A stretch of 63,873 nucleotides of DNA, filler included, from Trichosphaerium sp. ATCC 40318 (taxonomy: Eukaryota; Protista; Tubulinea), in assembly GCA_038496445.1 (NCBI GenBank). It is 5 parts of 5 records of this genome, joined end to end, with 100 filler letters (N's around TTAATTAATTAA, not from the genome) between each part and the next. Parts side by side here need not be neighbours in the genome. Positions count along the whole stretch, not along the records: positions 15,555 to 35,250 come from JALMLS010000437.1; 4 more parts are not named here. One strand, given 5' to 3'. The notes under the pieces were generated by a model. The model did no database searches and was not told where the DNA came from. It saw only the letters and a program-made list of their open reading frames with translations. The translations under genes and the position numbers were made by a program. Positions within the stretch are counted from its first letter, which is position 1. Each line of letters opens with the position of its first letter. This document shows positions 16,780 to 35,250 of the stretch, one piece after another.

Positions 16780-18020
16780 AGAAACTCTCCTACATGCTGC
16801 TGCCAACAGAGGTGATGTGAGCGTCATTAATTTATTAATACTCCTTGGATGTGTTGTTTAGACGCAACAAACAACTTAGGAAACACTGCCTTGCACTTTG
16901 CATCACTAAAAGGCAACTTTGACGCAGTGGATTGCCTCTTGGATCACGGTACGTTCCCGTTAAAATCCGTGAAGCTGATTTGTTACAAAAACAGGTGCTG
17001 ACACCTCTGTCCAGAATATGAAGTGTAAAACCGCGTTGAACATTGCAGTCATACTTGGGAACGATAAAGTGATAACTAGACTACGTCAGGGAATGAAAAC
17101 TCAACTAAGTCAACGAAACATACAAAATTGTTTGCATAAAACACGTGTAAGAAGCACTCCTTCTTTACCCCAACAAATTCTCTATACACGTTCATGCAAA
17201 TACTGGGGATTTATAAAGATGCTATCAAGTGGTAGAAGTCTAAATAGTGGGGTATGAGTTTGGAATATCGTATTAACCTAATGGCATTTTACTTAGAAAA
17301 AAAACCCGAACATACAAGGTAAAAATATACAACAATTTAGTGTGCATCTACAAGGAAATATCAATGAGTACTATTGTGTTATTAATAGCAAGGTAAGAAA
17401 CCTTGGCTACGTTACAAAAGAATACGAATGTACGGAACCTGAAGTGGAAAAACAAAACTTTGTAGTTGCAACACAATCATGCGAGAATTTTTACAACCAA
17501 GGAACCAAGTACACAGCAGAATTATCATTTCCACGTGGTGGCTATTACATCATTTCTATTAACAGAGAAGGTATTACAGACGCAGTAGTTTATGTAAGAG
17601 TTTATAGCAGTCGTGGCGTAAAAGCTGGAAAAGTTTTTGAGCCTATGGTAAAATATGATTCATTCAAAAAAATTAACCAGGTGTTTGCTGGCGACAAAGA
17701 TCTGAAGCCTTTTACACGTATTACAATTTCTCGCTCTAATACTAAGGAAATGGATTGTGATAATTCCAACCGCAAACGATCAGCGAATGATGAGTACGAT
17801 TCCCTTCCAACGTTTGATTTAACTAAAAATGTGTATAGTGCGAACCCAAACCCAAAGAAGCGACCTAACTTACAAGTGCCTCAAATCATTTCACTAGTTT
17901 AAATTAAACCGTTTGTATTGATACTGATTTTAGACAATAAAGTAGAATTTTATAGCGAAAATGTTTCTAAAGCAACTTTTGCTCAGCTGTATGCGCTACT
18001 GGGCAATAACTGTAGGTGCT
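16780..18020 (+). CDS. Ankyrin-repeat protein with an unknown C-terminal region; boundaries approximate
   Basis: ETLLHAAANRGD..., NNLGNTALHFASLKGNFDAVDCLLDHG|AD..KTALNIAV; then ORF 17342-17902. Confidence 0.75.
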
Positions 18021-18239
18021 AACGCAGCGAATTTTGAGTCATTAAATTCTTAAACAAGGCTGTATAATTTAAGTGTGATTGAGCAATGTTTACAAATGTA
18101 CATGTGTTTTATTTGTGTATTGTTTTTACTGTCTTCGCAGTTTACCTTCCTCAACTCTTTTTTGAAATATTGAATTACATTTCGTAATATCATCAACGTT
18201 TTTAAGACCAGTACCAAGAAGTCTAGCACCACGTGAAAC

Positions 18240-19158
18240 CTAAGCAACAACATCAGAACAACATTCCGTTCTCTGAAAAAAAAAGAGAGAAAAGTTTTCA
18301 AAGCAATAAAGTCGTACGTATATCATCTTCAAGCTCAGGAATACCAACATCAAAGGCATAGTAACTTCTAATATTTCAATATCTACAATATCTGATGTAA
18401 TTGGATCCTTCCATTTTCGTCGTAGAGGATGTTTATGTACAATCTCCATAATTTCTTTTTCAAGTCCCCATAGCTTTTTAATACTTTTTGATTTAAGTAC
18501 ATACCATCCAGATATACCAGACAGACATAAGAAATCAGATGTATTAATTTTAGTCTGACGGTAATAACCCTTAGGTACACCACGACGCTTATTTGCAAGA
18601 ACATCAAATCGGTTACAGCTCACTTCTGTGGATAAGTCAAGGTCGTTGTAAACAGCCAACCCACATTCCGCAGGATCATTTGTGACTGTATCTAGTAAGC
18701 TTTGTACTTTTTCTAGTGTATGGCCGACCTGTTACGAGTGTTAACTTCAAAAAATTCAGAAAAAAACAGTTGACGGAATATTTTTGATTGAGTTGAGTTT
18801 TACATGCTATGGTTCCGTAAGTACCTTGGTGCCATCTGTAAGTATGATATACTCAACGCCTTCGGCGATTAAGCGATTTGTGATCGTTTTCTCTTCAAAG
18901 AGCCAGGAAGCTGCACCGGAAGGGTATTCTGGTAGATCAGGCGACGTACTAGCACACCGAGGCTTTTTGTAAACGCTTGGGATCCACACTATTTTGTCTA
19001 TGTCGTGCCCGAATCCGTTGTGCTCCTTTAAATACGCCAGTATGGCATGTTTGTTTCTTCCTAAACGAGGAGCTTAGTTTACGATTATTTAAATGTTTTA
19101 TACCTGCGCTTAGCGCAATCCGAGTGCCCACTGGCATTAACCGCATGTGATAGCTCAT
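18240..19158 (-). CDS. Hypothetical spliced protein
   Basis: Consecutive minus-strand ORFs with intron-like gaps; no recognised motif. Confidence 0.35.
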
Positions 19159-19565
19159 TGAAGTGCATGTTTCAGGTTTATCGTTTAATTCTACAATAAC
19201 TTTCGGTTTGCTCTTTCCTAACCGAGTTCCTATGCGTATTAATCAGTATGAGACGTATTTTTAGATGCTGTACAATATTACCTAGCCCAGCGCACGAAAG
19301 TACATATAAAACTGTCTTTGAAGGTGTTAATACTGATACCGTGTTGCTCATATAAGTGTTTGTAAATTATGCAGCAAAGTATGCGTAAAGGCCTTTCCCA
19401 TTCATTGAATACTGTGTCAACGAATTTCAAGTAAACAAATACTCTGTGGTGAAAGTACCACTCAGAAGCAAGCCTTGTAGTACTTCCTCTTCTGTTGCAT
19501 ATTTCTCGTAATTTTCTTGCCGAATTACAACAATTAAGGCCTCTGATAGTGCCACGTCAAGTTTA

Positions 19566-21304
19566 TTAATTCTCGTTGGTTACAACTTTGTTGTATGGTA
19601 TTTTATGAGCACAAACACCGTTTTTCTTCTGGTTGGAACAAGAACATCCATCAGGACATACAGCAGGATCAACGTTTTCAACATCCTCCCATCCTACGCA
19701 ATGATAACAAGTAAGGACATAGTCAGGATCATATTTTTTCTTGACAGATAGTAGTTGGTTGTAGGCTTCGATTGAGCCATAGTAACTTATTTGCCAATCC
19801 TCATCAGATACAAAGTTATGTTGTGGTTCATTCCAATATACAAAGTTGTTTATGCCTGTTGGTTTCAATACAGTGTCTGCCCATTTATCAGCCTTTTCTA
19901 TTAAGTCAGGACGAGGTTTTCCTTTATCGACATCCCATCCTACATAACACGTGATAGCGATTGACGCTTTTCTTAAAGCTAGATTTACTGCTGTTTCTTT
20001 ACCAAGAGGATCAAGCGTACCGCTATAACCTCCAACAACAGAATTACAGTAGCAACCAATTAAAGCGCCAGGCCATTCTGTATCTGAATAGTCGTTTAAC
20101 CATTTCGAAATCTTCTCCATCTGACCATCTGTTTTTAAGTCGACAGCTGTTGACATCATATACATACTAACAGCTCCTCCGACATCGCTATAGTTATTAG
20201 CCTTCATAAAGTCGGAGTATGAGTCATGTGTTTGCTGAACTTTGCATGTAAGAAAGGCACAACCAGGTATTTTCGACAGCGGCTCCAATGCAGTTGTACA
20301 CTCTTTTGGATCACCTATACAATACGCATCTATGGTCACAACAGGAGCACCTGTTTCAGGGTCTATAACAGCGATGAAATAAGCACCAGCATTGTTCGGA
20401 GCATCACGCATCCAATCTTGATAAGTGTTCGCAATTTCGTCAGTAATGAGGAATCCTCCGTTGAACTCTGTTACAACTCCAGGATCTTCAAATACCTTGA
20501 ACGTAAGGGAAGTGACGATTCCGAACGGATTTCCCGAACTCCCTCTCAGCGCTCTGAATAGCTCTGGATGGCTATCAGCTGAAGCGGTTATTGGTGTGCC
20601 ATCAGCGAGGATTAAATCGATGGATACAATCAAATCCGCTCCTAAGCCAACCATTCGTGTCAAACGTCCATGACCACCGCCAAGAGCCCATCCAGCAGGT
20701 CCAACAGTTGGATCAGCACCGGTTGAAGCTACTAAGGTATTGCCACTTTCTTCACCAAGCCAGTTTTGTATTTCGCCCCATGTTTGTCCTAACAATTATT
20801 AGCAATTGACAAACAATCGGTCCATTGCTAGCGTACCTGGTCCAACTTTTATTTGTTTTGCTTCCTCGAATAACTCCTTGTCGTTATATTTCTTCATGAA
20901 TATAAGAATAGCATCGTCAACAGAGCTTCTAAGGGTAATGTAAGAACGTTATTTCCTTAAATAATATAGATTATACCTAACATCTTGATGATGTCCTGTG
21001 CTCTTTACAGCAATTCTGATATTGTGCTTAACAGCAAATGCCAAAGTGCTTATAATATCGTCATCGTTCTCGGGTATAACAACAAGAAGAGGTTGTGGAG
21101 GACCAGTGCGAAGATTATACGTAAAAATAGAATGTTTGTAAAGATCATCTCCTTTTTCGAATACTTCACCTTTGATGGTTGACTTGAACAACTCCACGTC
21201 AGTCGTGGTCGGCCATAGATCATCGCCGGTAGAGAAAACTCTTTGGCATCTATGATATACAGCGCAAAGAGTATTATTACTGAGATTAAAAGCTGTTGAT
21301 GCAT
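19566..21304 (-). CDS. Secreted FAD-linked oxidase (berberine-bridge-enzyme/VAO-like), 2 introns, 1-nt deletion near 21228
   Basis: Signal peptide; PGDDLWP; AVKSTGH; TVGPAGWALGGGHG; LFRALRGS; YWNE..YYG..YNQLLSVKKKYDP. Confidence 0.92.
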
Positions 21305-22573
21305 TGTTTGTTGTTTGTTTAGCAATATGAAAAAGTCACGTGATTAAGTCAACATAAACCCGAGTCGGATATTTCTAACGTGAAATTATGCGAGATCACA
21401 AAACCGGCCGAATTATGTAGCCGAGCTTTGATACTTTACGGAGGTATTCTGCTCCTTTAGAACTACACGCTCTTTAAATAATCGGTTACCCTAGACTTTG
21501 TAAAGCTATACTGGTCGGTAATTTAACACACAAACAGCAGTAGATATCTACAATGATTATATCCTATTGGCGGTAGTAGCACTAAGAATGGTTCAGATAA
21601 AATAAAGGCTTGGTCCTTTTTGGTATAACGAGCGGGTAAACGTAAAGCATAATTATGCCACGCGAACCGCCTACATTCGATGAATATGACTATTACAAGT
21701 ACACATTTTTGGTTGAATAGGCATTCCCACAAATGCCGAAAGGATGCCATACTTTAGTGTAATTAAAAAAACCTCACTCTGGTCGGATAGTGGCTGCGCT
21801 GTTGTAATTAATACGATAGATTGCATGTCGAAAATTTATAGAAAGAAAGGAAAGCACCAAAAACAACCGAGTTGGTGACAACGGCAATTTAGCAACGTTC
21901 TTTATTTTGTAGTATTACACCTGCTAATTATTTGCATGTTTAAACCACCCCTACTGGACAAATATGAGATCAAGCGACCAAACAAAGCATTTTCGGAAAG
22001 AACCCGTGCAAGAGTAAAGTGCAGCGTAGCACTTGAAAGTCCTCTTGCTTGTAGTCTTTTCTTTGTTGAATCTGGTTTTTTTCCAACAGCTAGAATTACA
22101 TAGGTGCCTTGTAATGAGCATTTCACAGTAGAAATCGCGTAGGCTTTAATACTAAGTGCCAGACACTGCCACAAATTAGTTTGTTGACAGTTTAAACATT
22201 CTTAGCTAGCACATAACTTGCGCATTACACAAGTAGAAACATGTATACTACTTCTCTGGATACAAAGTTACGAAAACAGTGAACTTCCCTTTACCGTGTC
22301 ATTATATTTAATTTGGATTCTTAGGAGGCTGAATCCATCCGGTTTAAGGATTCAGTTGACGATGCCACAAGATACTCTCTTACAGAAACTCACGTGGAGA
22401 AAAAAAACGTGATTAATAGGAGATGTAAGTGGATTGCGCTTGTTCTTCGTAAAAGATCCGAAAGTGCTACGTTTATAAAGTATAAAGGCCTTGCACAGTG
22501 ACTGTTTGTTACAATCACAATCTGATCTCGGCCGATTTTTTTCGGTCGTTATAAATTCATTGGAGTACTCAAT

Positions 22574-23668
22574 ATGAATAAACACCTCGTCATCGTGTTA
22601 ATAGCTATCGCAGTTGTATACTGTCAGGAGTTTGAGAGAGAACATAAAACAGAGAACGCTACAGTTAGATTTTTCGCTAATAGCAAGGTATCTTCAGTAT
22701 CATTTGTATTTGAGAAAGGAAACGGTATGCCAGTGTACGTTTTATTAATCTTTTTCAAAAAAACTCCTTATTTCACGTACGAATAGACTAAACGGCGTTA
22801 AAACTATCGTAGGAGTCCAGATAAAAGCCACGCCGAGATATTCAGATCATTAACAGGTGAAAAAGCGCCTAAGCTACTCAGCCATCATAAACCAGAGTTC
22901 CAGGACTCAAAACAGGTAAGCACAACCAAAAAAAGGACACGTGTTTTTTGTAAACAAACGTGTTCTTAAAATCTGTGTTTCAAGGCGGAGGTTATTGGTA
23001 AGAGAAATATTGTATGTAATAAGGCATGGGATTATATCGAAGAATTCGTGAAGGTACATTATAATCATGAACGTGATACGTTTGCCTTTTTCTTTCTTTT
23101 TTTTTTTCGATTTCTTCTTCGGTTGTTAATTATTTGGCTTAGCCTATTGATTACTATAACTACCTTTACAGTGATTACTGTAGATCAAGTTTAACAGCTA
23201 GTCCGTAAGTTAGCTCAGCTCCGTATTTTTCCGTGGTGAATTAACACGTGTATTTTATAGAAGCATGAGAGCGAGATTTGTTAACCAACTTACAATGGTT
23301 GTTGAGGGTCATGTATGCTTTCAAAAAAAATATATAATGTTTTCTCGTTATTAACTCTTAACAGGCTTGCAGCGCTTTGCAAATGCGCTGGTATAATAAT
23401 AGGTGGAGTACAAGAGCAGAAAAGTACGTTAATACAGTTATGTACTCATGAGTGTTTCTAAGTCAAAATAGTTGTGCCGCTGCAAGTAGTACTGGTCGCG
23501 AAAAGTTGATTTACTCTTCTTATTACATGAAGGTATTTTTATTTTTATTCTTCTTTGATTCACTGCTTATGCGTTTGTTTTTAGGAATATCATAGACCTA
23601 CACTTAGAGTAGCAACCAGATGTGAAAGCGATGAATGTGAATACCATAGATCCATATGGGATTGCTAA
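22574..23668 (+). CDS. Hypothetical secreted multi-exon protein
   Basis: Signal peptide MNKHLVIVLIAIAVVYC; regular GT-AG introns; Cys/Trp-containing final exons. Confidence 0.55.
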
Positions 23669-24833
23669 GGAATGAACTTTGAAGATAAAAAAAACTGCTG
23701 TTATTTTGTTAGCAATGAAAATAACGTTCTATAAACACGTGTTAGTAAATTAAAATCTCATCATTTTACAATTTTCCCTTGCAACCATAAAATAGTGCTT
23801 AAAAGATTAGACACAAGTAGTAATTCAAATCAAGAACAACATTCTGAAACCAAAATTTCTACAGAAGATTTCCAAAAACTCATTAAATTGAAAAAAAACA
23901 TTTTGTTTGGAAAAAAGTTGACAAGTCGAAACCGTTTTTGTGACATCTCTACTCAGGTTTGTGGGCATGTGGAGCACAAGTTAAACTTTGTTTTGGGATA
24001 CGCCTATGTCTCATTGTTTGGGCACTAAGTAATCCATTCTCATGCAAGTAGGTGTATTTGCTTACCAAACAATCGATGTTTTCATGCTACATCGATATTT
24101 ATTGGATGTACTATCTTCTTATTATTTTACGATCTTTGATGTGCCGCTTTTGTACCACTTATTCACCTTCTTGCCACACTTTAACTATTTCTGTGCCTCT
24201 CTTGTACGCTCCAGTCGGTTTGCCATGTACATCCACTTAAAAGTTTCCACTTTTCGGCTATGAAGCCTAAAATTGTGCAACTTTCCTGTCATTGGGAGCA
24301 TTTTGTTTTGTTACTTTTAATACTGTACCATCGAACTCTTGTAGTACTCCACCTTTACTATTGTTTAATCCTTATTTGATTCAATAGATTACAAGGATAG
24401 AAGTCGGATAACCAAATTTGACAAGCTTGTTGCAATTGAACGACAATCCAAAAAATGAGTATTATCAATTGTATTCACAATGTAATAACTCACAAACGCT
24501 AGCTCTGCGCTAGACTGTCTTACAATAACATATAATTCTTCTTCTAGCATAGTTCCTTGGCTGGACGCTAGAAGCCTTATACAATCTTGCTTTCAAATTG
24601 GGAAACTTACTAATTACGAACTCACATACACAAAACCGCTACTCCTTTGATTTCGTAGGTTTTTTTCTGATGAAGTAAACGTGTCATGTGAACGCAAGAA
24701 TTGCGTGATGTGAACGATGTTTTATTCACGCGAAAAGACTAGTCGTGACTAGTGCATATTCCCTCTATTGCGTTCCACATCGCAATATATCTTCCTGTTT
24801 TCCCTCAAAAATAAACTATCGTCAACCTCCGAG

Positions 24834-27226
24834 ATGACTTCTACTTCAAATGTTCCTTCAACTTCCGATGTCACAGGCATTACAGACTACGACTCCTCTT
24901 TTGAAACCCTTCAAAACCTTTTGATTACTTCTGGCGAAAAAGGCCGTAGCTCTGAATCTGACATGCTCTCGTCTTGCTTCCAAAGCGGCGTCAGCAAAGA
25001 TTTTCCTTCTTCTTGGATTAAAACAGATTTGTCAATTCGGAAAAATTTCCTAAACTTTTTCGTTCGTGTTTGCCGCGACCATTTGCAATGCCCAAACATT
25101 TTCTTCACCGACAAAGGCCGCCTGGCCCCTATTTCACAAGAAATTTCTGATTTCTTGCTTTCACATACTTCGAACAGCTCTAACCCCTCTCTCATAGTTC
25201 CAAATCAATCCCCAACCACATTGGCTCCAGCTCCTTCTCAAGCTTTGGTACTCGGCAAGATCCTCGAACAGATGACCGTATTGGCGCAATCCATGAAGTC
25301 GTTTCAGTCACCAGCTTCGTCCTCTCCTTCCTCCGCAGCTCCTTCGAGAACTGCAAAAGAAGCAAGACGCACTGGCTCCTCTGCTGACTCCACTAAGCAG
25401 ACTAATACAGGTCTAAAAATTAAAGTGGTATATACCAGTTTTTTTATGGTATATACCACTTTTTTCAACAAAATGGTATATGAACTGGTATATGAACTGG
25501 TATATACCATTTTGAAATACCACTTTTTTTAGAAATTAAGTGAATAAAAAAGAGGTATATGGAAGTGGTATATACCACTTTTCATTCACATAATGAGACC
25601 TTCTAAAAATGGTATATAAAGTGGTATATACCATTTTTTTATGGTATGTGGTATATACCACCTTTTTATTGGTATATACCACTTTTATGGTATACTTCAA
25701 GAAGGTCATTAAGGAGCTTTTTGGTAATGGGTTTTCTTGTTGAACGATCATAGACGTCATACATTGAACGGTGCGTAGGGACCTTAGTATATCATAGAAT
25801 CTAACCAAACCAGGCTCATTCGAACCGCAGGACCTGATTACAGTACCAACATTAAGGAAACTATATTGCAGGTATTATACAGACGTTCGTGGGTACCAGA
25901 CAAAGTTTTATTTTATTTTCGTTTGATATACATTAACCGACCTCCGTAGGCCTTAGTAATTGATGGATTCAGGTGGAACCACTTTCATTAGGTGCGCAGC
26001 ATGTTTTTAAAGTAGGTACAGCAAGCTCATGGAGATGGACAAATTTTCCAGACGCCCATAGTAATGTAACTGTAGTGGACATTGTCCAAAACTTGTAACT
26101 CACAAACTGTGTATTAAATAAAGTGTATTTTCTGGAATTGCAGGTGTACCATAAGTAGGCATAAAGTGGTATATAAGAGTGGTATATACCATGAAAAATT
26201 GGTATAAAAAAGTGGTATATAACTGGTATATACCTAAAAAAAGTGGTATAAAAAAGTGGTATATTTTTTTTTTTTCTGGTGAAAAAAAGTGGTATATTTC
26301 TGTTTTTATACCTGTTTTTTTTATTATATTTTTTTTGTATATTGTTGGTATATTTGGTCAATATACCACTATTGTTGGTATATTTGGTCAATATACCACT
26401 TTTTTTGGTATATTTCGGTCAAAATATACCACTTTTTTTGGTATATACCATAAAAAACTGGTATAAAAAAGTGGTATAAAAGTGGTATATACCAAAAAAA
26501 CTGGTATATTTTTTTAGACCTGATGGCTCTAAGTCTTCTGGTTGCCGCTCCTCTCCACCGATCGCTGCTGGTATGCTTGATGAGGAGTCTGACTCCGATG
26601 GTGATTATTTTGTCCCTGCTGACAAAATTGATGTTTTAGAGGAGAATTTGGAACATGAGTACCTGGACCCTGCTGCTCCTTCGAAACGCTTGAAACGTTC
26701 TCATTCACCTGAGGATCACCCTGATGATTCTCGCAAGAAACGGTTAGTACCTTCTGCACATGCACCCGTGATTTTTCTTTCTACTCTATGCAGCTGTAAC
26801 TCCCTTTTGCTTTCCGGAGCGTCTCGCACAGAGCTCCTCAGCGATACGAGTTACAGCCCAGTCGAGTTCGCCATGCTTAACATGCGCGCTATTCTCAAAT
26901 TCATCTCCATGGTGAAAGAGAATTCTCTTACTTTTGGTGCTTTAGTTGACTATGTCAATTATTTGGAGCACATTTTCTCATTTATTTCCAAAGATCTAAG
27001 GTGGACCGGTCCAAGGAGTATTCGACAGCTGGACTTGCAGATGCGCTCCGATCTATCAGGAAACGACTCCAAGTGGTGCGACATTCCTTCATACCTTTCT
27101 GCTATTCACTGTGTCCCACGTGACCACCATGGTAGCTTGAGGAAAACAAAGGAAACAGCATCCGACAGCTTGAACGCACCATCGAAAAGATCCAAAACGC
27201 CCAAGACACCCAAAAAGACCACTTAA
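24834..27226 (+). pseudogene. gag-like ORF1 split by element C
   Basis: Deleting 25408-26522 fuses ...KQTNN to GSKSSG...MLDEESD in frame; C-terminal YLEHIFSFISKDLRWTGPRSIRQLDLQMRSDLSGNDSKW. Confidence 0.75.
25408..26522. mobile_element. Non-autonomous TIR element, family C (1115 bp)
   Basis: TIR CAGGTCTAAAAA/TTTTTAGACCTG; many GGTATATACC palindromic subterminal repeats; removal restores the host ORF. Confidence 0.9.
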
Positions 27227-27261
27227 GATGCCACGAAGACCATCGATCCATGAAATCTTGT

Positions 27262-28384
27262 CAGGGCTGAAACTAAACAAGGCTTTGCCTTAAATATGAA
27301 GGCATTTTTTTAAAATTAGGCATTGATGGCAAAAATCAGGCATGCAAAAATGGCAATGCCTGATTTTGCAAAGGCAATGGCAGAAAAGGCAAAAATCAGG
27401 CATTGAAATAAGGCTTTGTTGGGCAATGCCTTAATTGTTGCAATGCCTTGTTTTTTTTAGGCAATGCCTGCCCTAGTTTTTTTATGCATTGCCAGCCTTA
27501 AATTTACAGGCACCAATTAGGCATTGGTTGTGTACACATTGTACATTAAGGATACATTGGTTTAAGGTAAGTTTCCACCACACCAACACTTCCTAAACAT
27601 TTTTTTTCATTTACTACTGACGTTTTATATAGACGACGTCGCCACACTCTTAGTATTTTATAGATTCTAACGAAACCACTGCCATTCAAACCGCAGCACC
27701 CAAATTCACCTACAATAGGAGTATAGGTACTTTAAACCATTTTTCCAGTCCGCGAAAATTATACCAATAATTTGTTAATTTTTTAAGCTAAAGGTTTTTA
27801 TTCACATGGAGGACATTGAAGTTTTTTGTGTTTTGTGTACTGTACTTTAATAAATGAATCACTATTGTATGTCTATATAAAGCCTTGTTTTATGAGTATA
27901 TAGTGCCTGGGTTATGCCCAAAAATTGAGGGCAAAAATGCCTTATTGTTGCACTAAAAATGAGGCATTATTGGACCAACAATGCAGGCTATTTTAAGGCT
28001 AATTAGTGAACCAGTTGCTTGCTATTTGGCCCAAATATGAGGCTTCAAAGCCCAAAATTACAAGGCAATGCCTCATATTTGCTCATTTTTTTTGGCAAAA
28101 ACAAGGCAATTTGGTGAAAAATAAGGCTGTATTTGGTGGCAAAAAAAAGGCTTTTGCAAAAAAAGCCTTATTTAGTTTCAGCCCTGCTATTTTAAGGCTA
28201 ATTAGTGAACCAGTTGCTTGCTATTTGGCTCAAATATGAGGCTTCAAAGCCCAAAAGTACAAGGCAATGCCTCATATTTGCCCATTTTTTTTGGCAAAAA
28301 CAAGGCAATTTGGTGAAAAATAAGGCTGATTTGGTGGCAAAAAAAAGGCTTTTGCAAAAAAAGCCTTATTTAGTTTCAGCCCTG
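27262..28384. mobile_element. Non-autonomous TIR element, family B copy 1, with a duplicated right end
   Basis: 25-bp TIR CAGGGCTGAAACTAAA(C/T)AAGGCTTT; GT on both flanks; AGGCA/TGCCT subterminal repeats. Confidence 0.92.
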
Positions 28385-28819
28385 GTGGGAGATGTCATTT
28401 TCGCGACTGATATGTTGCCAAAAGGGGTAGTCCTTTCACCCCTTACTATTCGTGTTCACCTCTGGAATAAAATGCTTTCTGATCACCCTCTGTGTTCCGT
28501 TATTGTCGCCTGGCTTACTTATGGTGTCAGTGTGGTTAACCAAAATGCTCCCTCTGAGCCTACATTTGTTAACAATTATTCCTCTTGCTTCGAACACGAG
28601 AAATTACTCAGTGATGACGTTTCTCACGAACTCTCTCTCGAAAAAATAGCTCCTTGCTCTTTCAAACCCTTCCGCTCCAATGCCCTAGGTGTCGTAGTTA
28701 AATCCAACAGCAAAGCACGCCGCGTGGTTGATCTCAGCGCACCTCGAGGCCGATCTGTCAACGACATGAATGTGCCTCCACATTTCAAAATGGCAGGTAT
28801 TGCTGAAGCCATTCGCTTC
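28385..28819 (+). pseudogene. DIRS/Ngaro-type reverse transcriptase N-terminal fragment
   Basis: WNKMLSDHP..WLTYGV..NNYSS..ELSLEKI..NALGVVVKSNSKARRVVDLSAPRGRSVND; truncated before the catalytic xxDD. Confidence 0.85.
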
Positions 28820-30890
28820 CAGTAGTAAAATAGAAATGGGAATTTTTAAGTAATCCACCCTGTTTTTCTATGGGAAAAGTAGACAGAAAAACTCTTCCTT
28901 AATTCCCATTGAATTTATATAAAATTCTGTAAGTATTACTCATAGAATTCTTAAAGTATTACTTTTGGAATTGCATATGTATTTTATATAGAATTCTCTA
29001 TGTATTCTTTATAGCATTTCTTATGTATTTTTTGTAGATTTCAATAAAAAATACTTTATAAATTACACAAAATATTATTCAATACTTTGGTTCAGATTTA
29101 ATGCAAAGTCATTTTATTTATTGATCATTACAAAATACAAACATCCTAAATAATATGTACAAGTTAAATACATCGTGTCTTCATAAACGAAAGAAGTAAT
29201 TTGATTGCATTTGGTTTTGAGAGCCTGAACAATAATTAATGCGTTTGTAAACGCTAAATTAAGAACGTGTAGGGTTTTTTGATAAATTAAGTGGAAATAA
29301 GCTTTAAAAACAACGTACTTGGAGTTAATGCTTTAAATACATTCTTTAATGGTGTAATAAGGCTGTTGCAATGCTTTAATCATCCTAAAACAGATAAGTA
29401 AGAGATATTTATGTTTAAGTGATTTTCCAAACAGGGCTGAAACTCAACAAGGCATTTTTGGACAATGCCTAGGCATTTTCATCCAAATAATGCCTTATTT
29501 TTTACAAAAATGCCTAGTTTTTGCCTCATTCAAAAAGGCAAATACAGGGCAATGCCTTATTTTTTGCTCCAAAAATGCCTTATATTTGATGAAAAATGCT
29601 TGCATCTGGTACACAAGATTGCAATGGTTTTGCCTGCATATTTTTAGGAATTATGCCCTTCAAATTAGGGCATAACTCATGCATCAATGCCTTATTTTGA
29701 AGGCAAAAAGAAGGCATTATCATAGTCTATAGTGCCTAATAAACCAGGGCATTTTCAGGTAATAACACAACTATTTATTTTATAATACAGTACACATACA
29801 ATACACAAAACTCCTAAGTCCACATTTGAAAAAACCTTAAAGAAAATATGAGATGGTGTAGAAAAAAAAAAAAAAAAAACTTACCTTGTAGTGTTAGAAT
29901 TCCGCGGTCCTGGAAATATCGCGGAGTTCACTCCTACTACTATTGTAGGTGAAATAGGGTGCTGTGGTTCGTTTGGCGGTGGTTTCGTCTAATTTCATGA
30001 ATTACTAAGAGCGCTAGATGCCTATCTATATAAAACGTCAGTAGGTGATGTGAAAAAAAAAGTGTAAAAGTTGTTTGACTGTTACTTACCTTAAAACACT
30101 TCCTTAAAGTGATCAGTCCTATGATATAGTATAGGCAATGCCTTATATATGAATTAAAATACAAGGCATATATTGCTTAAAAAAATAAGGCATAATAAAG
30201 GCATAAAGTACTTGCAATACAGGGCATTACTTGATTTTCTGCAATGCCAAAAAATGCAATACAAGACATTACCTGATTTTATGCAATGCCAAAAGATGCC
30301 CAAAAATGCCTGGTATTAATGCCTTTTTGATGAAGGCATTGCCTTTTTGTAAAAATGCCTTATTTTATTGGGCATTGCCAAATGCAAATGCCTTGATTTT
30401 GCCATTTGATGCCAAATGTTAGGAATATGCATCATTTTTTAAGGCAATGCCTAGCTGAGTTTCAGCCCTGAACCACCTAAAACGTGTTCTCCGTTACTTT
30501 TTGGATTAACGCACTTTAACCTGTACCATTGGTTTTTTCACCTTTAATAATAGCATGTGGATATTGTTTGCTAGAAAAACCTATGTACCTAAGGTGTCGA
30601 TGGTTTTTTGCAAATATAAACTAAACCCTAACCCTAACTTAATTTGTACTTTCATAAACCTCAACCCTAGCCCTAACCCTAACCCTAACTAAATTAGTAC
30701 ATTATTTGGTGGATTTTGTACAATAATTCTGAAAATTCCGTATTTAAGGGAATATTATGGTAATTCTATCAAAAATCCTGCCATAAAAAAAAATAAAAAT
30801 AAGAATTCTTCACAAATTACCTTAAAAATCCCTAAAACAAAGGAATTTAGTGGGATTTATATCCAAAATCCCGTTTTCATTTTACCACTG
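28820..30890. mobile_element. Family A copy 2, containing nested element B2
   Basis: Near-identical to 1373-2403 once 29432-30470 and one AA are removed. Confidence 0.92.
29432..30470. mobile_element. Family B copy 2 (1039 bp), opposite orientation to B1
   Basis: 15-bp perfect TIR CAGGGCTGAAACTCA; the empty site in A1 (TTCCAAACCACC) shows a 2-bp AA duplication. Confidence 0.95.
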
Positions 30891-33467
30891 AAGATCACTT
30901 TCAGAGCTCTTGTAAAGAGCGGTGATGCAAACACTGGCGACTTTTGGTGGCCTAACTTGGAAGGAGATGTCACCTTGACAGAATCGTCAGAATCCCTTCC
31001 AAACACAGGATGGTTCCAAACTCAAGTACGCTTTTTTCCTTTCATGTTGTTGTCGTAATGTATCGCGTACTTATTCTCTACCAAGCTTGGACAATCATGC
31101 ACTGATAGATGTGAGGCTGAGAGCCTCAAATGTGATACTGTTTCAATGGAAAGTATCAACAGCATCAGTAAAGTTGAATCTGAATTATCGCCAGCAGGCT
31201 TTATTTGCGAAAAACCAATCTTGAGCGGTTGTAGCTCTATTGGTGCTTCTCAAAGTGCTGATGGATTTTGCTATTTTGACAACACAAGATGTGAATCTCA
31301 AGGTCGTACAGATGAAGCTGTTTCATGTGAGGCTAAAACCACAGATGAAGAAGACGGGTATGCTCCTTTTTTTCAGGAAACTGTTTTTCTCAAACTAACT
31401 CTTTCACTGTAGTCTTCGCTTCTGTAAATGTATTGAAGTCACTCAAGCACCTGTAGAGCCAGAAAACACCACAGTTCCAACAAATGCTCCTCCAACAACT
31501 GATGCGCCTACTGTTGCTCCTACTGTTACTGCTATTGAAGTACTTGCTCCTTCAAACGAAACCTCCTTTTTGTCACCATCATTGCGACCAAAGGTTTCAG
31601 TATTGTTCCTCTGTTTGTGCACACTTGGCTTGGCTTTCTTCAAAGGAGGTCGTTCATCAACACCTATGCTACTTGTAGTTGTAGTTGTTGCTCTTATTGC
31701 TATGCCATCAGTGCAAGGACATAACTGGATGTTCAGTCTTAGTAGACGTCCATACGCAAGTACAGAAACACCTTGTCCTCCGGTAAATCAAGAATATCCT
31801 CATGTTCAAGTTGGACCGAATCAAGAGTTCGAGATGGAGTGGGCTCAAGGCCACAGCAGTACATCTTACTTCATTATCATGCACCAGAAGTACGAGGACA
31901 AGTTGAAGCTAAACAACCAAGCTCTATTTGCAAAGTACTTTAATGACGCACCTGCCGGAGCTGTAAAGACACTTGAAGTCCTTCACAGACGTTTCGCTTA
32001 TCGTGAACCTAATGCAGTAAAAGACGCTCCACTTGGTGACGAGATCTTAAGCACAGATGGAGACTTTATTCCTAGACCAGAAGCTTTTGGTGGTTGGGGT
32101 GTTAACGCAACGTTATTCAACTACAAGGAAAACCTTCACGAGAATAACTACGCTGAATATGAACATCCCGATATGCCTTGGGTTGAAGCCATCTTTAAAG
32201 CAGAACATCTCACAGGACAACCTAGAGATGCTGATATGGCTAAATTTACTATACCTGGCCGAGCTGGTACAGGTAGATACATCGTTCATTGGCTATGGAG
32301 AGGTTACAGGGATTGTATTGACATTGATTACGTTGAAGAAAATGTTGAAGAGATCTATGGTGTTGCAGACGAATCAGAATCTTACGCGTACGATACCATA
32401 CGTTTTAGTTGCCTTTTTTTTTTTTGACTAGTTTTGGTCGTTTTCTTGACCTGATTTTATGTAAATCTACTGGTTTAGACTTGAATCACGTGATTGTAGT
32501 GTTCGAAAACTTATTTTATTTTAGACGCGTAGATCATTGTTATTTCCCAGAATACCGTTCGGCAGGAGGTAAGCGTATATGATTAATACAAACGAATCTT
32601 TGTTGACACCTTTTTGTAGATTGCAGTCGCTTAGTCTCTAACGATTTGGCTTACTGCCAAAGAAGGTGTACAACCAACTGTGCTGGTGTGGCTGTTATGC
32701 CTTTATCAGTAGCAAATTTCTACAGCGAAGAAGCTGGTCTTGTTGACCCTTCGTGCATGAACCTATTCAATATGACAATAGAAACTGAAGCACCAGAGGA
32801 TATTAATGTTTGCTTTTATGTTAGAGCTAGATTGCCTTCTGATACTTTTGGTGTCAACGAAATTGTATACCCAGATGACCCAGCATATCAAGCAACTTGC
32901 TTCATGAAAACCCCAGGGCGTGTATTCCCTGGGTACGTACCACCAACGACAAAACACATTCCATGGAAACACGGAGACAAATGCATTGATTGTGACACTG
33001 TTAAATTGAATAGTGTTTTATCAGTAATCCCAAAATGGCCTCTTTCTGACGATTGTGTTAATTGTGACCGCGAGCCGAGCACAATTGAACTACCCAAGGT
33101 ACCTACACTTACAAATGAAAGGGTAAACTCTACCTGTAATGGAGCAAACGGCCTCTGGAGAAATGTCAATGGATCAAAATATCATACTTGTAATGGTACA
33201 AACGCAGAAGTTGGTGAACTATGTCACAAGCAACTTTCTATCAACGGACGTTCGCTAAACGTCCAATTCTTCCCTTCAGAGTGCGCAGCAGCTGCAGCTA
33301 GGGATCCTGAATGTGCAGGCCATGTATCAATATACGGAGGTAGTCTATATGTTGGCTCTAAACGAAGTGGAAAATGCTACTGCCAAACAAAGGTAGAGTG
33401 TTGTAATGGGTGTCATCGCATATCTAGAAATGAACGTTGGACATTATTCGATGTTGAATACTTGTAA
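30891..33467 (+). CDS. 5'-truncated multidomain surface protein: Reeler-like end, Cys-rich domain, PT linker, two hydrophobic helices, His-brace/LPMO-like domain, Cys-rich C-terminus
   Basis: Spliced frame is continuous from KITFRALVKSG through GQSC..C....C..LRFCKC, the hydrophobic pair, SVQG|HNWM..WAQGH and WLWRGYRDCIDI. Confidence 0.75.
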
Positions 33468-33799: not shown

Positions 33800-35070
33800 A
33801 TTAACGTATTACAGCGGGGCGAAAACTCCTAACGTTTTCCCATCATACAGCCTTGAAATTTCTATTAATAAGCTACAAAAGACATATGAGTTTGTTTTTG
33901 TGAAATGGTCGAGCACTTTATTTGATGTTTTACAAAATAGTTACAATGTTAGTAAATGTTTGTTCTTGTGTTGCATCATTATCGAATATATTATCATCAT
34001 AAAGAACTGCTTGCTGGTCAATAACAGTATTAATATGAGGAGTGAAAGTATCACCAAAATCAAGACCAACAAGAACACCATAACGACTAACAAGAAGGTT
34101 TGTTAAAACAGTTTCCAATGTAACTTCATCAACAATAACACCTTGAGCATGTACAGAAAGTCTTTGTAACCTTGGTACCATACTACTATTAGCTAGAGAC
34201 TCAAAGAAGTTTACTTTATCAGAAATTGATGCATCAGCATAACCAAGAGTAGTAATAGAAGAATTTGGGTTGTTAAGAGCATCTAAGAAAAGCTTGTTGT
34301 AACTTTCTTCGAATCCAGGAATTTCATGGCTAAATCACGTGTAAGTGTCAAATGTCAAACACCAAAAAAAATCAAAAATTCGAGAAAACTACGATCACGT
34401 GTGTTTTGTGAAACGTCGGGTTTTATCCTCAAGGCATGTAAAACTAATTTACATCATAATATAACGTAAATGATGTTGTAACGAAGCTGTAGCGTCAGCA
34501 GAATAAAACTTCTTTTCAAAAAAAAAAAAAAAGAATTTCACGACAGGTTTGGAAGCGCTTGACAACAAACATATCCAAATATCTAAACGACTGTGTTACG
34601 TACTTATTACAGAACCTTATGAGAAGAGTCTTCAATGATGAATTATACTTTATAGACTTCATCAATACATAGAAAGTCTCCTTTCTGAAAACAACACCAT
34701 CCAAACATAAATACGTTAAAACATTTCTTTCAAGCCTATAAGTCATAGCTTTTGTTATAGCCATATCGATAACATATCCATTATTACTCAACCTTGTAGC
34801 TTTTGTAATATTCCTACAAAGTATCTTCTTTATAAGGTCAAAAGAGAGGAACTGAAAGAGACCATCTTGCTTGTATTTCGAGATAAGGATCAATCTAACT
34901 TCTGACCATGTGAAATCACTTGATACCTTATTTATAGTAGATACACGCCAACCAGATGCTTGTTCCGAGTTTACGAAAACGTTTATAGCGTTTATAGTAA
35001 TATTGCCGTTATACCTTTTAATAAATACGTTAATGAATGCGCTATACGATAAACAGCGGAACAATGGCAT
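33800..35070 (-). CDS. One or two RNI/LRR-like hypothetical proteins, possibly degenerate
   Basis: KYNSSLKTLLI; NPNSSITTLGY; RLQRLSV. Confidence 0.35.
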
Positions 35071-35250
35071 CGTTGTGGTTTATTTGCTAAAAACCGACAA
35101 CTTTTTATTAAAATCATAATTTGAAGCCTTTTTCTAGTCTGCGATGGTGTGTAGTATAAAATAGCGAATGTTTGACGCCGACGTACAAATCTGGATGATA
35201 ATCAACTTGATACGGCGTTAAACGCCCTAAACGCTTTGTGAACTCCGCAA

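What the first reader, a model, noticed from the sequence alone, without database searches (positions are those of the whole stretch)
31413..32330. Apparent membrane polyprotein: an internal signal peptide would expose an N-terminal His-brace (LPMO-like) domain
Seen: one stop-free exon runs from the end of a Cys-rich ectodomain and PT-rich stalk through helix 1 (VSVLFLCLCTLGLAFF), a short loop (KGGRSSTP) and helix 2 ending in a signal-peptidase-like site (LLVVVVVALIAMPSVQG) directly into HNWM (His codon 31720). A second His follows in WAQGH (31852), then GRYIVHWLWRGYRDCIDI. Established: LPMO/His-brace copper proteins need His as residue 1 of the mature chain, so they normally sit right after the N-terminal signal peptide and often end in a W.W...Y..C.D[IV] strand. 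Inference: one ORF yields an anchored Reeler/Cys-rich protein plus a released copper protein through virus-like internal signal-peptidase processing.
Basis: partly seen in the sequence, partly recalled or inferred. Interest (0 to 1): 0.8.

Follow-up and report, generated by a model that had tools for sequence, protein, structure and literature searches.

The report
Internal signal peptide unmasks LPMO-like domain
This exon belongs to a widespread, undescribed protist protein family in which a copper-enzyme-like (LPMO-like) domain sits in the middle of a longer precursor. A second, internal signal peptide lies directly before its essential first histidine, so cleavage there would split the precursor into a membrane-anchored Reeler protein and a free histidine-first protein.

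Summary
Exon 31413-32387 reads in one frame through a PT-rich stalk, helix 1, a basic loop KGGRSSTP, a signal-peptide-like helix 2 ending VQG, and then HNWM (His codon 31720).

An exhaustive search found 434 relatives.
- In 83 of 126 listed relatives with the HNW motif, the His domain is internal, mostly behind a Reeler domain and a Cys-rich module.
- All 83 internal forms have A, G or S at -1 and an allowed residue at -3.
- 74 of the 83 show the same two-helix hairpin with a short, mostly basic loop.
- Only 25 of the 83 have a Met that could start translation at helix 2.
- Trinity and MMETSP transcripts and one intronless genomic contig carry the fused reading frame.

Evidence for a copper site:
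- H1 and H45 are the only invariant histidines, and Y196 is nearly invariant.
- An AlphaFold2 model (pLDDT 90.5) matches X325, AA15, AA13 and many AA9/10/11/16 structures best (Z 7.6-5.2), with residue 1 aligned to their His1.
- No Pfam, NCBIfam or PDB sequence match reaches significance, so this is a new LPMO-like family.

Caveats:
- Cleavage, copper binding and site geometry were not tested.
- The 5' exons (signal peptide and most of the Reeler domain) were not found at this locus, so this copy may start at Met 31666.
- Astrotactins are a cellular precedent for this kind of cleavage.

The parts
30894..31025 (+). Exon A: the last strands of the Reeler domain (ITFRALVKSGDANTGDFWWPNLEGDVTLTE...WFQTQ). 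The donor is AA|GTACGC.
   Evidence: tblastn places it against P0001 174-310 and other homologues. A family HMM of the N-terminal halves matches at E 4e-14. The N-terminal halves of homologues hit Pfam Reeler PF02014 above its cutoff.
31086..31357 (+). Exon B: Cys-rich module (LGQSCTDRCEAESLKCD...SCEAKTTDEEDG) with all family cysteines kept. It ends in phase 2.
   Evidence: The family HMM matches at E 6e-21. tblastn shows collinearity. The sequence and splice sites were read.
31413..31593 (+). Start of exon C: CxC motif followed by a Pro/Thr-rich stalk with NxT/S sites.
   Evidence: Translation; collinear with the linker of P0004 and P0008.
31594..31641 (+). Helix 1 (VSVLFLCLCTLGLAFF): the proposed stop-transfer anchor of the N-terminal product.
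   Evidence: 74 of 83 internal homologues have two hydrophobic segments with a median length of 17 aa each.
31642..31665 (+). Short basic loop KGGRSSTP, proposed to face the cytosol.
   Evidence: loop median 4 aa, with net positive charge in 54 of 74 homologues.
31666..31719 (+). Helix 2, the internal signal peptide MLLVVVVVALIAMPSVQG. Val is at -3 and Gly at -1. The Met at 31666 could also serve as a start codon at this locus.
   Evidence: -1 is A, G or S in 83 of 83 internal forms, and -3 is A, V, T, S, C or G in 83 of 83. The distance from the last charged residue to the site has a median of 19 aa, against a median N-terminal signal-peptide length of 18 aa.
31720..32387 (+). LPMO-like domain beginning with His1 (HNW...R9). 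The second His, H45, is at 31852-31854. The strand W193-G195-Y196-D198-C199-D201 lies at 32296-32322. The exon ends at a GC|GTACGA donor.
   Evidence: 434 homologues. Invariant columns are listed. The AF2 model has pLDDT 90.5. Structural matches to X325, AA15, AA13 and AA9/10/11/16 reach Z 7.6-5.2 with residue 1 on His1. The best Atlas shape match has TM 0.53 to an LPMO_10-containing cluster. Language-model features also point to LPMO clusters.
32525..32568 (+). Exon D: (A)RVDHCYFPEYRSAGG, the conserved 'RIDHC.F' motif that follows the His domain.
   Evidence: Splice sites read. tblastn collinearity with P0001 597-, P0007 557- and P0009 542-.
32620..33467 (+). Exon E: C-terminal Cys-rich region with no hydrophobic segment. 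The stop codon TAA is at 33465-33467.
   Evidence: P0005 ends at the equivalent point. No downstream TM segment is present in 72 of 83 internal homologues.

Best explanation
The exon encodes the junction of a two-part secretory precursor that defines a large, undescribed protist family.

The full architecture in homologues is:
- an N-terminal signal peptide
- a Reeler domain, in some members followed by DOMON or TSP1 domains
- a ~10-Cys module
- a Ser/Thr/Pro-rich stalk
- hydrophobic helix 1
- a very short basic loop
- hydrophobic helix 2 ending in a small-x-small site
- an invariant His that begins a ~210-residue beta-sandwich domain
- Cys-rich C-terminal domains, in a minority followed by a TM anchor and a cytosolic tail

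Proposed mechanism (inferred, not shown):
1. The Reeler half is translocated into the ER.
2. Helix 1 stops transfer and the basic loop stays cytosolic.
3. Helix 2 re-initiates translocation as an internal signal peptide.
4. ER signal peptidase cuts after VQG (31717-31719).

This would leave a membrane-anchored Reeler/Cys-rich protein. It would also release a protein whose first residue is His.

That free amino terminus, together with invariant His45 and probably Tyr196, would form a copper histidine brace like that of LPMOs and X325/Bim1. The domain is a new LPMO-like family rather than a member of AA9-AA17.

Forms with an ordinary N-terminal signal peptide directly before HNW also exist and interleave with the fused forms in the tree. 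Helix 2 therefore behaves as an interchangeable signal peptide.

At this locus the 5' exons were not found. The copy may be expressed as the full precursor from distant or unassembled exons, or only from Met 31666.
For: Shown by tools:
- The sequence and the in-phase splicing of exons A-E are as described, collinear with P0001 174-880 and others.
- 434 homologues have E<=1e-3 and 18 have E<=1e-30.
- Of 126 listed homologues with the HNW motif, 83 have the His at position 80 or later. The sequences read in full show the same order of parts.
- -1 is A67/G10/S6 and -3 is A/V/T/S/C/G in 83 of 83 internal forms. N-terminal forms comply in 41 of 43 at -1 and 43 of 43 at -3.
- 74 of 83 internal forms have two hydrophobic segments, with a median loop of 4 aa that is net positive in 54 of 74.
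- The h+c length has a median of 19 aa, against a median of 18 aa for the family's N-terminal signal peptides.
- Only 25 of 83 have a Met at -26 to -15.
- The fused ORF is seen in Trinity and MMETSP transcripts from Amoebozoa and Cercozoa, on an mRNA-sized contig and in an intronless genomic ORF.
- Reeler PF02014 scores above its cutoff in 9 of the 15 N-terminal halves or full-length internal homologues scanned.
- The invariant columns are H1, N2, W3, R9, H45, Y73, G195 and D198. Y196, W193 and D201 are conserved at 90% or more.
- The AF2 model has pLDDT 90.5 and pTM 0.89.
- The top VIA-align matches are LaX325 (Z 7.6, 125 aa, 3.2 A), TdAA15A (Z 7.2, 115 aa, 2.5 A) and AA13 (Z 6.5).
- 13 of the top 25 rows are His-brace proteins. 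In each, model residue 1 is paired with the first residue of the chain as numbered, which I take (from my own knowledge of these entries) to be the mature His1.
- AA9 is the only Pfam family hit by more than one family member (4 of 107, best E 0.005).
- Protein-language-model features of two members point to LPMO_10, SCE4755-PMO and BIM1-like clusters.

From the literature:
- A His brace needs a free N-terminal His, and all known classes obtain it from an N-terminal signal peptide (PMC10952591).
- ER signal peptidase cleaves astrotactins after a second TM helix (10.1101/493858).
Against: - No experiment or RNA data exist for this organism; no sequencing run was listed.
- Cleavage is inferred from sequence statistics only, because no SignalP-type predictor was available.
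- Structural similarity is in the twilight zone (Z<8). Foldseek gave no hit at E<=1e-3, and generic Ig-like sandwiches score nearly as well.
- No Pfam, NCBIfam or PDB sequence match was significant.
- The motif HNW..SR is unlike the N-termini of known LPMOs as I recall them.
- In the window, the first ~170 residues of the precursor (signal peptide and most of the Reeler domain) were not detected in 15 kb upstream. That region holds a TE-like block and another gene.
- Helix 2 at this locus happens to start with Met, so this copy may not be made as a fusion.
Confidence: 0.7

Rival explanations
1. At this locus only, the copy is 5'-truncated by the repeat/TE block at about 24750-30500. Exons A and B and the stalk with helix 1 are recent relics. 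[quoted passage not shown] The family-level fusion would still be real, but this locus would not use it.
For: - No trace of the first ~170 residues was found in 15555-30890 by HMM, tblastn or motif scans.
- A BBE-like oxidase gene on the other strand and TE-like ORFs lie in between.
- Exon A's open frame has no Met.
- Helix 2 starts with Met here, which only 25 of 83 homologues allow.
Against: - Exons A and B keep their frames, splice phases and every family cysteine, which argues against long decay.
- Small, diverged 5' exons or an assembly gap could escape detection.
- There is no stop codon between helix 1 and Met 31666.
Confidence: 0.25
2. The hairpin is not cleaved. The protein is a two-pass membrane protein with both large domains outside the cell. 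The His would then not be N-terminal, and the domain would be a non-copper beta-sandwich, for example an adhesion or binding module.
For: - Two hydrophobic helices of ~17 aa could form a stable hairpin.
- The structural Z scores also fit generic Ig-like folds such as adhesins and pilins.
- No cleavage data exist.
Against: - Compliance with the -3/-1 rule in 83 of 83 internal forms, directly before an invariant His, has no explanation without cleavage.
- The same domain occurs right behind ordinary N-terminal signal peptides, with the same site, in 43 forms.
- The only two invariant histidines are H1 and H45.
Confidence: 0.07
3. Cleavage occurs, but the His1 domain is not a His-brace copper protein. 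The N-terminal His would serve another role, and the LPMO resemblance would be convergent or generic.
For: - There is no significant sequence link to any AA family.
- Invariant N2, W3 and R9 are unusual for LPMOs.
- Z stays below 8.
Against: - The top three structural matches, and 13 of the top 25, are His-brace proteins aligned from residue 1, with 12-22% identity. Other sandwich folds mostly show 3-12%.
- The pattern of two invariant His plus a conserved Tyr on a late strand matches the copper site of LPMOs.
- Language-model and shape searches independently return LPMO clusters.
Confidence: 0.1
4. The fused ORFs are artefacts: chimeric assemblies or read-through gene calls of two neighbouring genes.
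For: Many hits come from metagenome or metatranscriptome contigs with automatic gene calls.
Against: - The same in-frame junction, without a stop codon or UTR, recurs in 83 clusters at 50% identity or less. These come from different assemblers, sources and named taxa.
- It is also present in the window's own genomic exon.
Confidence: 0.02

Closest known systems
Lytic polysaccharide monooxygenases (CAZy AA15, AA13, AA10, AA9, AA11, AA16)
   Same: - Secreted beta-sandwich domain of about 200 aa whose first mature residue is His, created by signal-peptidase cleavage.
- A second conserved His and a conserved Tyr on a late strand.
- The best structural matches are TdAA15A (Z 7.2), AA13 (Z 6.5) and several AA10, AA9, AA11 and AA16 structures (Z 5.2-6.0).
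   Different: - No significant sequence match to any Pfam LPMO model or PDB chain.
- A distinct signature, HNW..SR...PC / EW..GH / W.GY.DC.D.
- The domain is usually internal, behind a Reeler module and a TM hairpin. A 2023 review states that all known LPMOs have N-terminal signal peptides (PMC10952591).
- Activity and substrate are unknown.
X325 / Bim1 LPMO-like copper proteins (LaX325, PDB 6ibh)
   Same: - The top structural match (Z 7.6, 125 aligned residues, rmsd 3.2 A, residue 1 to residue 1).
- A His-brace protein that is not known to cleave polysaccharides and is implicated in copper handling at the cell surface.
- An acidic residue completes its copper site (PMC10952591). Here D198 is invariant and D201 nearly so.
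   Different: [quoted passage not shown]
- This family is ~210 aa, found in protists, and followed by large Cys-rich domains.
- The window protein has no hydrophobic C-terminus.
- There is no sequence similarity.
Astrotactins 1 and 2 (vertebrate)
   Same: [quoted passage not shown]
- Endoproteolysis at the end of TM helix 2 by ER signal peptidase (bioRxiv 10.1101/493858).
   Different: - The domains are unrelated.
- In astrotactins the new N-terminus has no known chemical role, and the fragments stay disulfide-linked.
- Here the cleavage would create the metal-binding N-terminal His.
- Cysteine parity gives no sign of an inter-fragment disulfide.
Viral glycoprotein polyproteins (bunyavirus Gn/Gc, flavivirus prM/E, alphavirus E2-6K-E1)
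   Same: A stop-transfer helix is followed by an internal signal peptide that host signal peptidase cuts. Two ectodomain proteins are thus made from one ORF in fixed stoichiometry (for example SFTSV Gn/Gc, PMC5113920, listed).
   Different: - This is a cellular gene family of protists.
- No viral relatives were found in IMG/VR.
- The products are not envelope proteins.
Ferric-chelate reductase 1 / SDR2-type proteins (Reeler-DOMON-cytochrome b561)
   Same: - Extracellular Reeler, sometimes with DOMON, on a membrane anchor (Pfam hits).
- From my own knowledge, these domains occur in trans-membrane electron-transfer proteins. DOMON-fold cytochrome domains, as in cellobiose dehydrogenase, reduce LPMOs.
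   Different: - No cytochrome b561 or haem-binding evidence was found here.
- The anchor is a two-helix hairpin.
- Any redox or metal-handling role of the Reeler half is speculation.

Membership tests
LPMO / His-brace copper proteins (general) | His is residue 1 of the mature chain, immediately after a signal-peptidase site. | tested here: met
   VQG|H in the window. 83 of 83 internal and 41 of 43 N-terminal homologues have a small residue at -1, and all 126 have an allowed residue at -3. Cleavage itself is inferred, not observed.
LPMO / His-brace copper proteins (general) | A second conserved copper-ligand His. | tested here: met
   H45 (31852-31854) is invariant in 107 sequences. It is the only invariant His besides H1.
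LPMO / His-brace copper proteins (general) | An Ig/FnIII-like beta-sandwich with the N-terminus at the flat face. Structural similarity to solved LPMOs. | tested here: met
   The model has pLDDT 90.5. Z is 7.6 to 5.2 against X325, AA15, AA13 and AA10/9/11/16, and 13 of the top 25 matches start at residue 1. This is moderate, because Z stays below 8 and Foldseek found nothing at E<=1e-3.
LPMO / His-brace copper proteins (general) | T-shaped N3 geometry (NH2, His1 N-delta, second His N-epsilon) with an axial Tyr or Phe. | not testable with these tools
   The structure tool does not return model coordinates. Y196 is conserved at 90% or more on the penultimate strand, which is only suggestive.
LPMO / His-brace copper proteins (general) | Copper binding and oxidative cleavage of a polysaccharide. 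| not testable with these tools
   Needs biochemistry.
Existing CAZy or Pfam LPMO families (AA9 PF03443, LPMO_10 PF03067, BIM1-like PF20238, DUF7492) | A significant match to the family profile. | tested here: not met
   There were no Pfam hits for the window domain at E<=1. Among 107 members only AA9 recurs (4 members, best E 0.005, below significance). NCBIfam and PDB profile searches were blank.
X325 / Bim1 | A C-terminal GPI-anchor signal after the copper domain. | tested here: not met
   The window protein ends ...RWTLFDVEYL* with no hydrophobic tail. 72 of 83 internal homologues have no downstream hydrophobic segment. No GPI predictor was run.
Reeler domain (PF02014) | A match to the Reeler profile in the N-terminal half. 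| tested here: inconclusive
   Homologues score above the cutoff in 9 of 15 scanned. The window holds only the last ~44 residues, which match a family-specific HMM at E 4e-14. The rest of the domain was not found.
Astrotactin-type maturation (internal signal-peptidase cleavage after a TM hairpin) | An N-terminal signal peptide, a lumenal N-domain, two TM helices with a cytosolic loop, and a signal-peptidase site at the end of helix 2. | tested here: met
   The hairpin and site are present in the window and in 74 of 83 homologues. An N-terminal hydrophobic start is seen in full-length homologues. The window's own N-terminal signal peptide was not found.
Astrotactin-type maturation (internal signal-peptidase cleavage after a TM hairpin) | Demonstrated cleavage that is sensitive to a signal-peptidase inhibitor. 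| not testable with these tools
   Needs in vitro translation with microsomes.

The most novel reading that the evidence does not exclude
The precursor may be a self-contained, fixed-stoichiometry two-component extracellular copper or redox system. Internal signal-peptidase cleavage would both activate a new family of His-brace oxidases, by creating His1, and leave its dedicated partner in the membrane. That partner would be the Reeler (sometimes Reeler plus DOMON) and Cys-rich ectodomain. It would deliver electrons or copper to the released enzyme, or tether it, much as viral glycoprotein pairs stay associated. This would be a new CAZy-type AA family with an unknown substrate in amoebae and Rhizaria. 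It would also be the first case in which an internal signal peptide is a mandatory activation step for a metalloenzyme.
Probability: 0.3. Interest if true: 0.85.

Novelty: new variant of a known kind. Interest (0 to 1): 0.72.

Why it matters
His-brace copper proteins bind copper only once a signal peptide has been removed from in front of their first histidine. A 2023 review states that every known class has that signal peptide at the N-terminus (PMC10952591).

Here a large protist family has hundreds of 50%-identity clusters, with named members in Amoebozoa, Cercozoa and Acantharea. It places the His1 domain in the middle of a precursor and keeps a perfect signal-peptidase site in front of it.

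If confirmed, four things follow:
- A new LPMO-like family is added that no profile library currently detects.
- Searches restricted to "signal peptide then His at the N-terminus" miss His-brace proteins.
- There would be a second cellular example, after the astrotactins, of polyprotein-style internal signal-peptidase processing, this time with a clear chemical reason for the cut.
- The constant Reeler (sometimes plus DOMON) partner becomes a candidate redox or copper-handling companion, which is directly testable.

Tried and rejected
- **Family and sequence searches.** Pfam and NCBIfam scans of the window's domains and homologues gave nothing significant. The word-index protein search with the window protein was blank. 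The same search with the alignment returned only two hits because of the length filter. The PDB profile search gave only chance hits.
- **Structure.** Single-sequence AF2 was useless (pLDDT 37). Foldseek against the PDB gave no hit at E<=1e-3.
- **Expression.** No sequencing run was listed for the locus, so read laying was never used and expression, transcript starts and splicing could not be checked.
- **Missing 5' exons.** A family HMM on six-frame segments, sensitive tblastn and motif regexes found nothing in 15555-30890.
- **C-terminal tail.** A search for an extra C-terminal Cys-rich tail exon found nothing. The gene ends where P0005 ends.
- **Inter-fragment disulfide.** Cysteine parity gave no signal.
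- **Relatives elsewhere.** No viral relatives were found in IMG/VR.
- **Literature.** No papers link LPMO with Reeler, with an internal signal peptide, or with a polyprotein plus signal peptidase. A search for CYBDOM plus LPMO was also blank.
- **Rejected ideas.**
  - Chimeric assembly as the source of the fusion is unlikely, because it recurs too often and in frame.
  - Internal initiation as the general rule is unlikely, because most homologues lack a Met.
  - AA15 membership is not supported, because nothing matches LPMO_10.
- **Left out by instruction.** The spliced exons were never joined into one protein for searching or folding. Each exon was used by reference only.
Full report
**1. What is in the sequence**

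The piece is AT-rich eukaryotic DNA (37% GC). Its introns are short (51-137 nt) and run from GTA(C/T/A)G to a (T/A)AG acceptor.

In the frame of 31414 the exon reads through the following parts:
- a CxC motif and a Pro/Thr-rich stalk
- helix 1, VSVLFLCLCTLGLAFF (31594-31641)
- the loop KGGRSSTP
- helix 2, MLLVVVVVALIAMPSVQG (31666-31719)
- HNWM, with His at 31720
- the second His, in WAQGH at 31852
- the strand GRYIVHWLWRGYRDCIDI, ending at 32325

The open stretch is 342 codons.

The exon model I derived is:
- exon A, 30894-31025 (end of the Reeler domain)
- exon B, 31086-31357 (Cys-rich module)
- exon C, 31413-32387
- exon D, 32525-32568
- exon E, 32620-33467 (stop codon TAA)

All junctions are in phase. 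The intron before exon C has a CTAAC branch-point-like motif.

**2. Relatives**

Pfam, NCBIfam and the word-index search gave nothing.

The exhaustive phmmer search found 434 cluster representatives at E<=1e-3, and 18 at E<=1e-30. In most of them the match lies at about residues 300-600 of proteins 900-1600 aa long.

The top hits read in full all share one architecture:
- a signal peptide
- a Reeler-like domain
- a ~10-Cys module
- a Ser/Thr/Pro linker
- a first hydrophobic helix
- a short loop containing Arg or Lys
- a second hydrophobic helix
- AxA|HNW[ILMV]..SR...PC

tblastn shows the window gene to be collinear with these from P0001 residue 174 to 880.

Pfam Reeler (PF02014) scores above its cutoff in 9 of the 15 N-terminal halves or full-length internal homologues scanned. 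Some members add DOMON or TSP1 domains.

**3. Is the fusion real?**

Named sources are de novo transcript assemblies:
- Amoebozoa: Flabellula baltica (P0004), Rhizamoeba saxonica (P0009) and Cavostelium apophysatum (P0036, 'type:complete')
- Cercozoa: Mataza sp. (P0079, MMETSP0087)
- other assemblies: MMETSP0437 (P0005 cluster) and an assembly labelled Euplotes focardii (P0022)

P0001 sits on a 2994-nt contig with the ORF at 46-2976, which is the size of an mRNA. P0013 is an uninterrupted 952-aa ORF on a 6-kb genomic contig with neighbouring genes.

The fusion is therefore not an assembly or gene-calling artefact.

Only 25 of 83 internal forms have a Met at -26 to -15. Internal initiation cannot be the general way to make the His1 protein.

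**4. Signal-peptidase signature**

Of 126 listed homologues with the HNW motif, 83 have the His at position 80 or later.
- In all 83 internal forms, -1 is A (67), G (10) or S (6), and -3 is A, V, T, S, C or G.
- The 43 N-terminal forms show the same pattern: 41 of 43 comply at -1 and 43 of 43 at -3.
- 74 of the 83 internal forms show two separate hydrophobic segments, each with a median of 17 aa.
- The loop has a median of 4 aa and is net positive in 54 of 74.
- The distance from the last charged residue to the site has a median of 19 aa (IQR 17-21). The family's genuine N-terminal signal peptides have a median length of 18 aa. The window's value is 22.

This gives a stop-transfer helix, a cytosolic basic loop, and a signal-peptide-sized helix with a canonical c-region directly before an invariant His. 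I know of no explanation for this pattern other than cleavage.

On a tree of the 107 His domains, N-terminal and internal forms interleave, and well-supported branches force at least 9 switches. Helix 2 thus behaves as an interchangeable signal peptide.

**5. What the His1 domain is**

The alignment A1 (107 sequences) has these invariant columns: H1, N2, W3, R9, H45, Y73, G195 and D198. Conserved at 90% or more are P18, G44, D142, Y147, P153, G185, W193, Y196 and D201.

With this alignment AlphaFold2 gives a confident beta-sandwich (pLDDT 90.5, pTM 0.89). The single-sequence model reached only pLDDT 37.

Foldseek found nothing at E<=1e-3, although AA10, AA13 and AA11 appear among its weak rows.

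The Foldseek-independent search over 48,161 chains ranks:
- LaX325 first (Z 7.6, 125 aligned residues, 3.2 A)
- TdAA15A second (Z 7.2, 115 residues, 2.5 A)
- AA13 third (Z 6.5)

In that search, 13 of the top 25 rows are His-brace proteins (AA9, 10, 11, 13, 15, 16 and X325).
- Their sequence identity to the model is 12-22%, against mostly 3-12% for the unrelated sandwich folds.
- Model residue 1 always aligns with the chain's first residue. I take this to be the mature His1, from my own knowledge of these entries. Examples are residue 35 of CelS2, 37 of CjLPMO10A and 28 of CBP21.

Other lines of evidence agree:
- The best Atlas shape match (TM 0.53) is a cercozoan 'chitin-binding type-4' cluster.
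- Language-model features of two different family members return LPMO_10, SCE4755-polysaccharide-monooxygenase and BIM1-like clusters. These score 0.80-0.87 and are leads only.
- AA9 is the only Pfam family hit by more than one member (4 of 107, best E 0.005).

The Z scores are below 8. On their own they would only indicate a common sandwich fold. The enrichment for His-brace proteins, the residue-1 register and the pattern of conserved ligands together make an LPMO-like His brace the best reading. I put this at about 0.75.

I could not measure the site geometry because the model's coordinates are not exposed. By sequence criteria the domain belongs to no existing family, so it is a new LPMO-like family.

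**6. Mechanism (inferred)**

1. The N-terminal signal peptide targets the precursor to the ER and the Reeler/Cys-rich half is translocated.
2. Helix 1 stops transfer and the basic loop stays in the cytosol.
3. Helix 2 re-initiates translocation.
4. Signal peptidase cuts after the small-x-small site.

Product 1 would be a Reeler/Cys-rich ectodomain anchored by helix 1, with helix 2 retained or trimmed.

Product 2 would start with His1 and carry the Cys-rich C-terminal domains.
- It would be soluble in 72 of 83 homologues and in the window, which have no downstream hydrophobic segment.
- It would be anchored by a C-terminal TM helix in the other 11.

The His-brace review states that copper cannot bind until the signal peptide is removed, and that all known classes have N-terminal signal peptides (PMC10952591).

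Internal signal-peptidase maturation after a TM hairpin has a cellular precedent in astrotactins (10.1101/493858). It is routine in viral glycoprotein polyproteins (papers listed).

Why the Reeler half is co-encoded is unknown. A redox, copper-handling or tethering partner role is speculation. It rests on the Reeler-DOMON association in electron-transfer proteins, which I cite from my own knowledge. Cysteine parity gives no hint of a disulfide link between the halves.

**7. Caveat for this locus**

The first ~170 residues of the precursor (signal peptide and most of the Reeler domain) were not found in the 15 kb upstream. I searched with a family HMM, sensitive tblastn and motif scans.

That interval holds a repeat/TE-like block at about 24750-30500 and a BBE-like FAD oxidase gene on the other strand.

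Exons A and B are intact: their frames, splice phases and all family cysteines are preserved. Two readings remain:
- The 5' exons are distant, diverged or unassembled.
- The copy was recently truncated and now works from Met 31666 as an ordinary signal-peptide-then-His1 gene. I put this at about 0.25.

No RNA data could be obtained.

**8. Novelty**

Full-text searches found no paper linking LPMOs with Reeler domains, with internal signal peptides, or with polyprotein-style processing.

I rate this a new variant of a known kind. It combines three things:
- a new LPMO-like family
- an unprecedented internal position, unmasked by an internal signal peptide
- a constant Reeler partner

No viral relatives were found.

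The spliced exons were never joined into one sequence for any search or fold.

Noticed in passing
window 19569-20795 and 20952-21335, minus strand: Two exons of a berberine-bridge-enzyme-like FAD oxidase (PF01565 FAD_binding_4 and PF08031 BBE), about 10 kb upstream of the LPMO-like gene. From my own knowledge, oxidases of this kind (CAZy AA7) can supply H2O2 or electrons to LPMOs. The proximity may be coincidence.
   Followed up: partly
window 24750-30500: A repeat or transposon-like block.
- Long ORFs at 24753-25529, 26480-27223 and 28202-28822 have no Pfam hit.
- The same peptide start (LVNQLLAIW.KYEASKPK...) opens both 28003-28236 and 28202-28822, a ~200-bp direct duplication.
- ORFs near 29361 and 30158 look like related repeats (MPYFLQKCL-type peptides).
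- The block lies where the gene's missing 5' exons would be expected.
   Followed up: partly
homologues P0030, P0038, P0103, P0020: Variations on the architecture.
- A DOMON domain lies between Reeler and the hairpin in P0030 and P0038.
- P0103 carries thrombospondin type-1 repeats.
- P0020 has a C-terminal TM helix, a Pro-rich tail and a WW domain.
- 11 of 83 internal forms have a C-terminal TM anchor.
   Followed up: partly
window 31086-31357 and homologues P0004, P0038, P0103: The ~10-Cys module after Reeler weakly resembles the C-terminal end of Glyco_transf_18 (GnT-V, profile positions ~470-557). E values run from 1e-5 to 0.04, all below the curated cutoff. The meaning is unknown.
   Followed up: no
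window ~31550-31641 and the equivalent part of homologues: A run of small residues (S/A/G/N) 5-10 aa before helix 1 looks like a GPI omega site with a spacer and a hydrophobic tail (for example SSATRPLISLF..., SDASSMRSGLVSL...). Helix 1 is not C-terminal, so GPI anchoring of the Reeler half after cleavage or trimming is only a thought. No predictor was available.
   Followed up: no
tree of alignment A1: N-terminal-signal-peptide and internal forms of the His1 domain occur as close sister pairs: P0111/P0097, P0031/P0052 and P0109/P0122. These could be paralogues, alternative transcript starts or truncated contigs. There are also clean N-terminal-only clades, for example the P0006/P0011 group, which includes Phyllostaurus siculus.
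   Followed up: partly
window 22574-22783, plus strand: A small ORF starts with a signal-peptide-like MNKHLVIVLIAIAVVYCQ. It is unrelated to the family's N-terminus and its function is unknown.
   Followed up: no
window 33933-34334 and 34519-35079, minus strand: Two open reading stretches of 134 and 187 codons lie downstream of the gene. Neither has a Pfam hit. They may be exons of a neighbouring gene.
   Followed up: no
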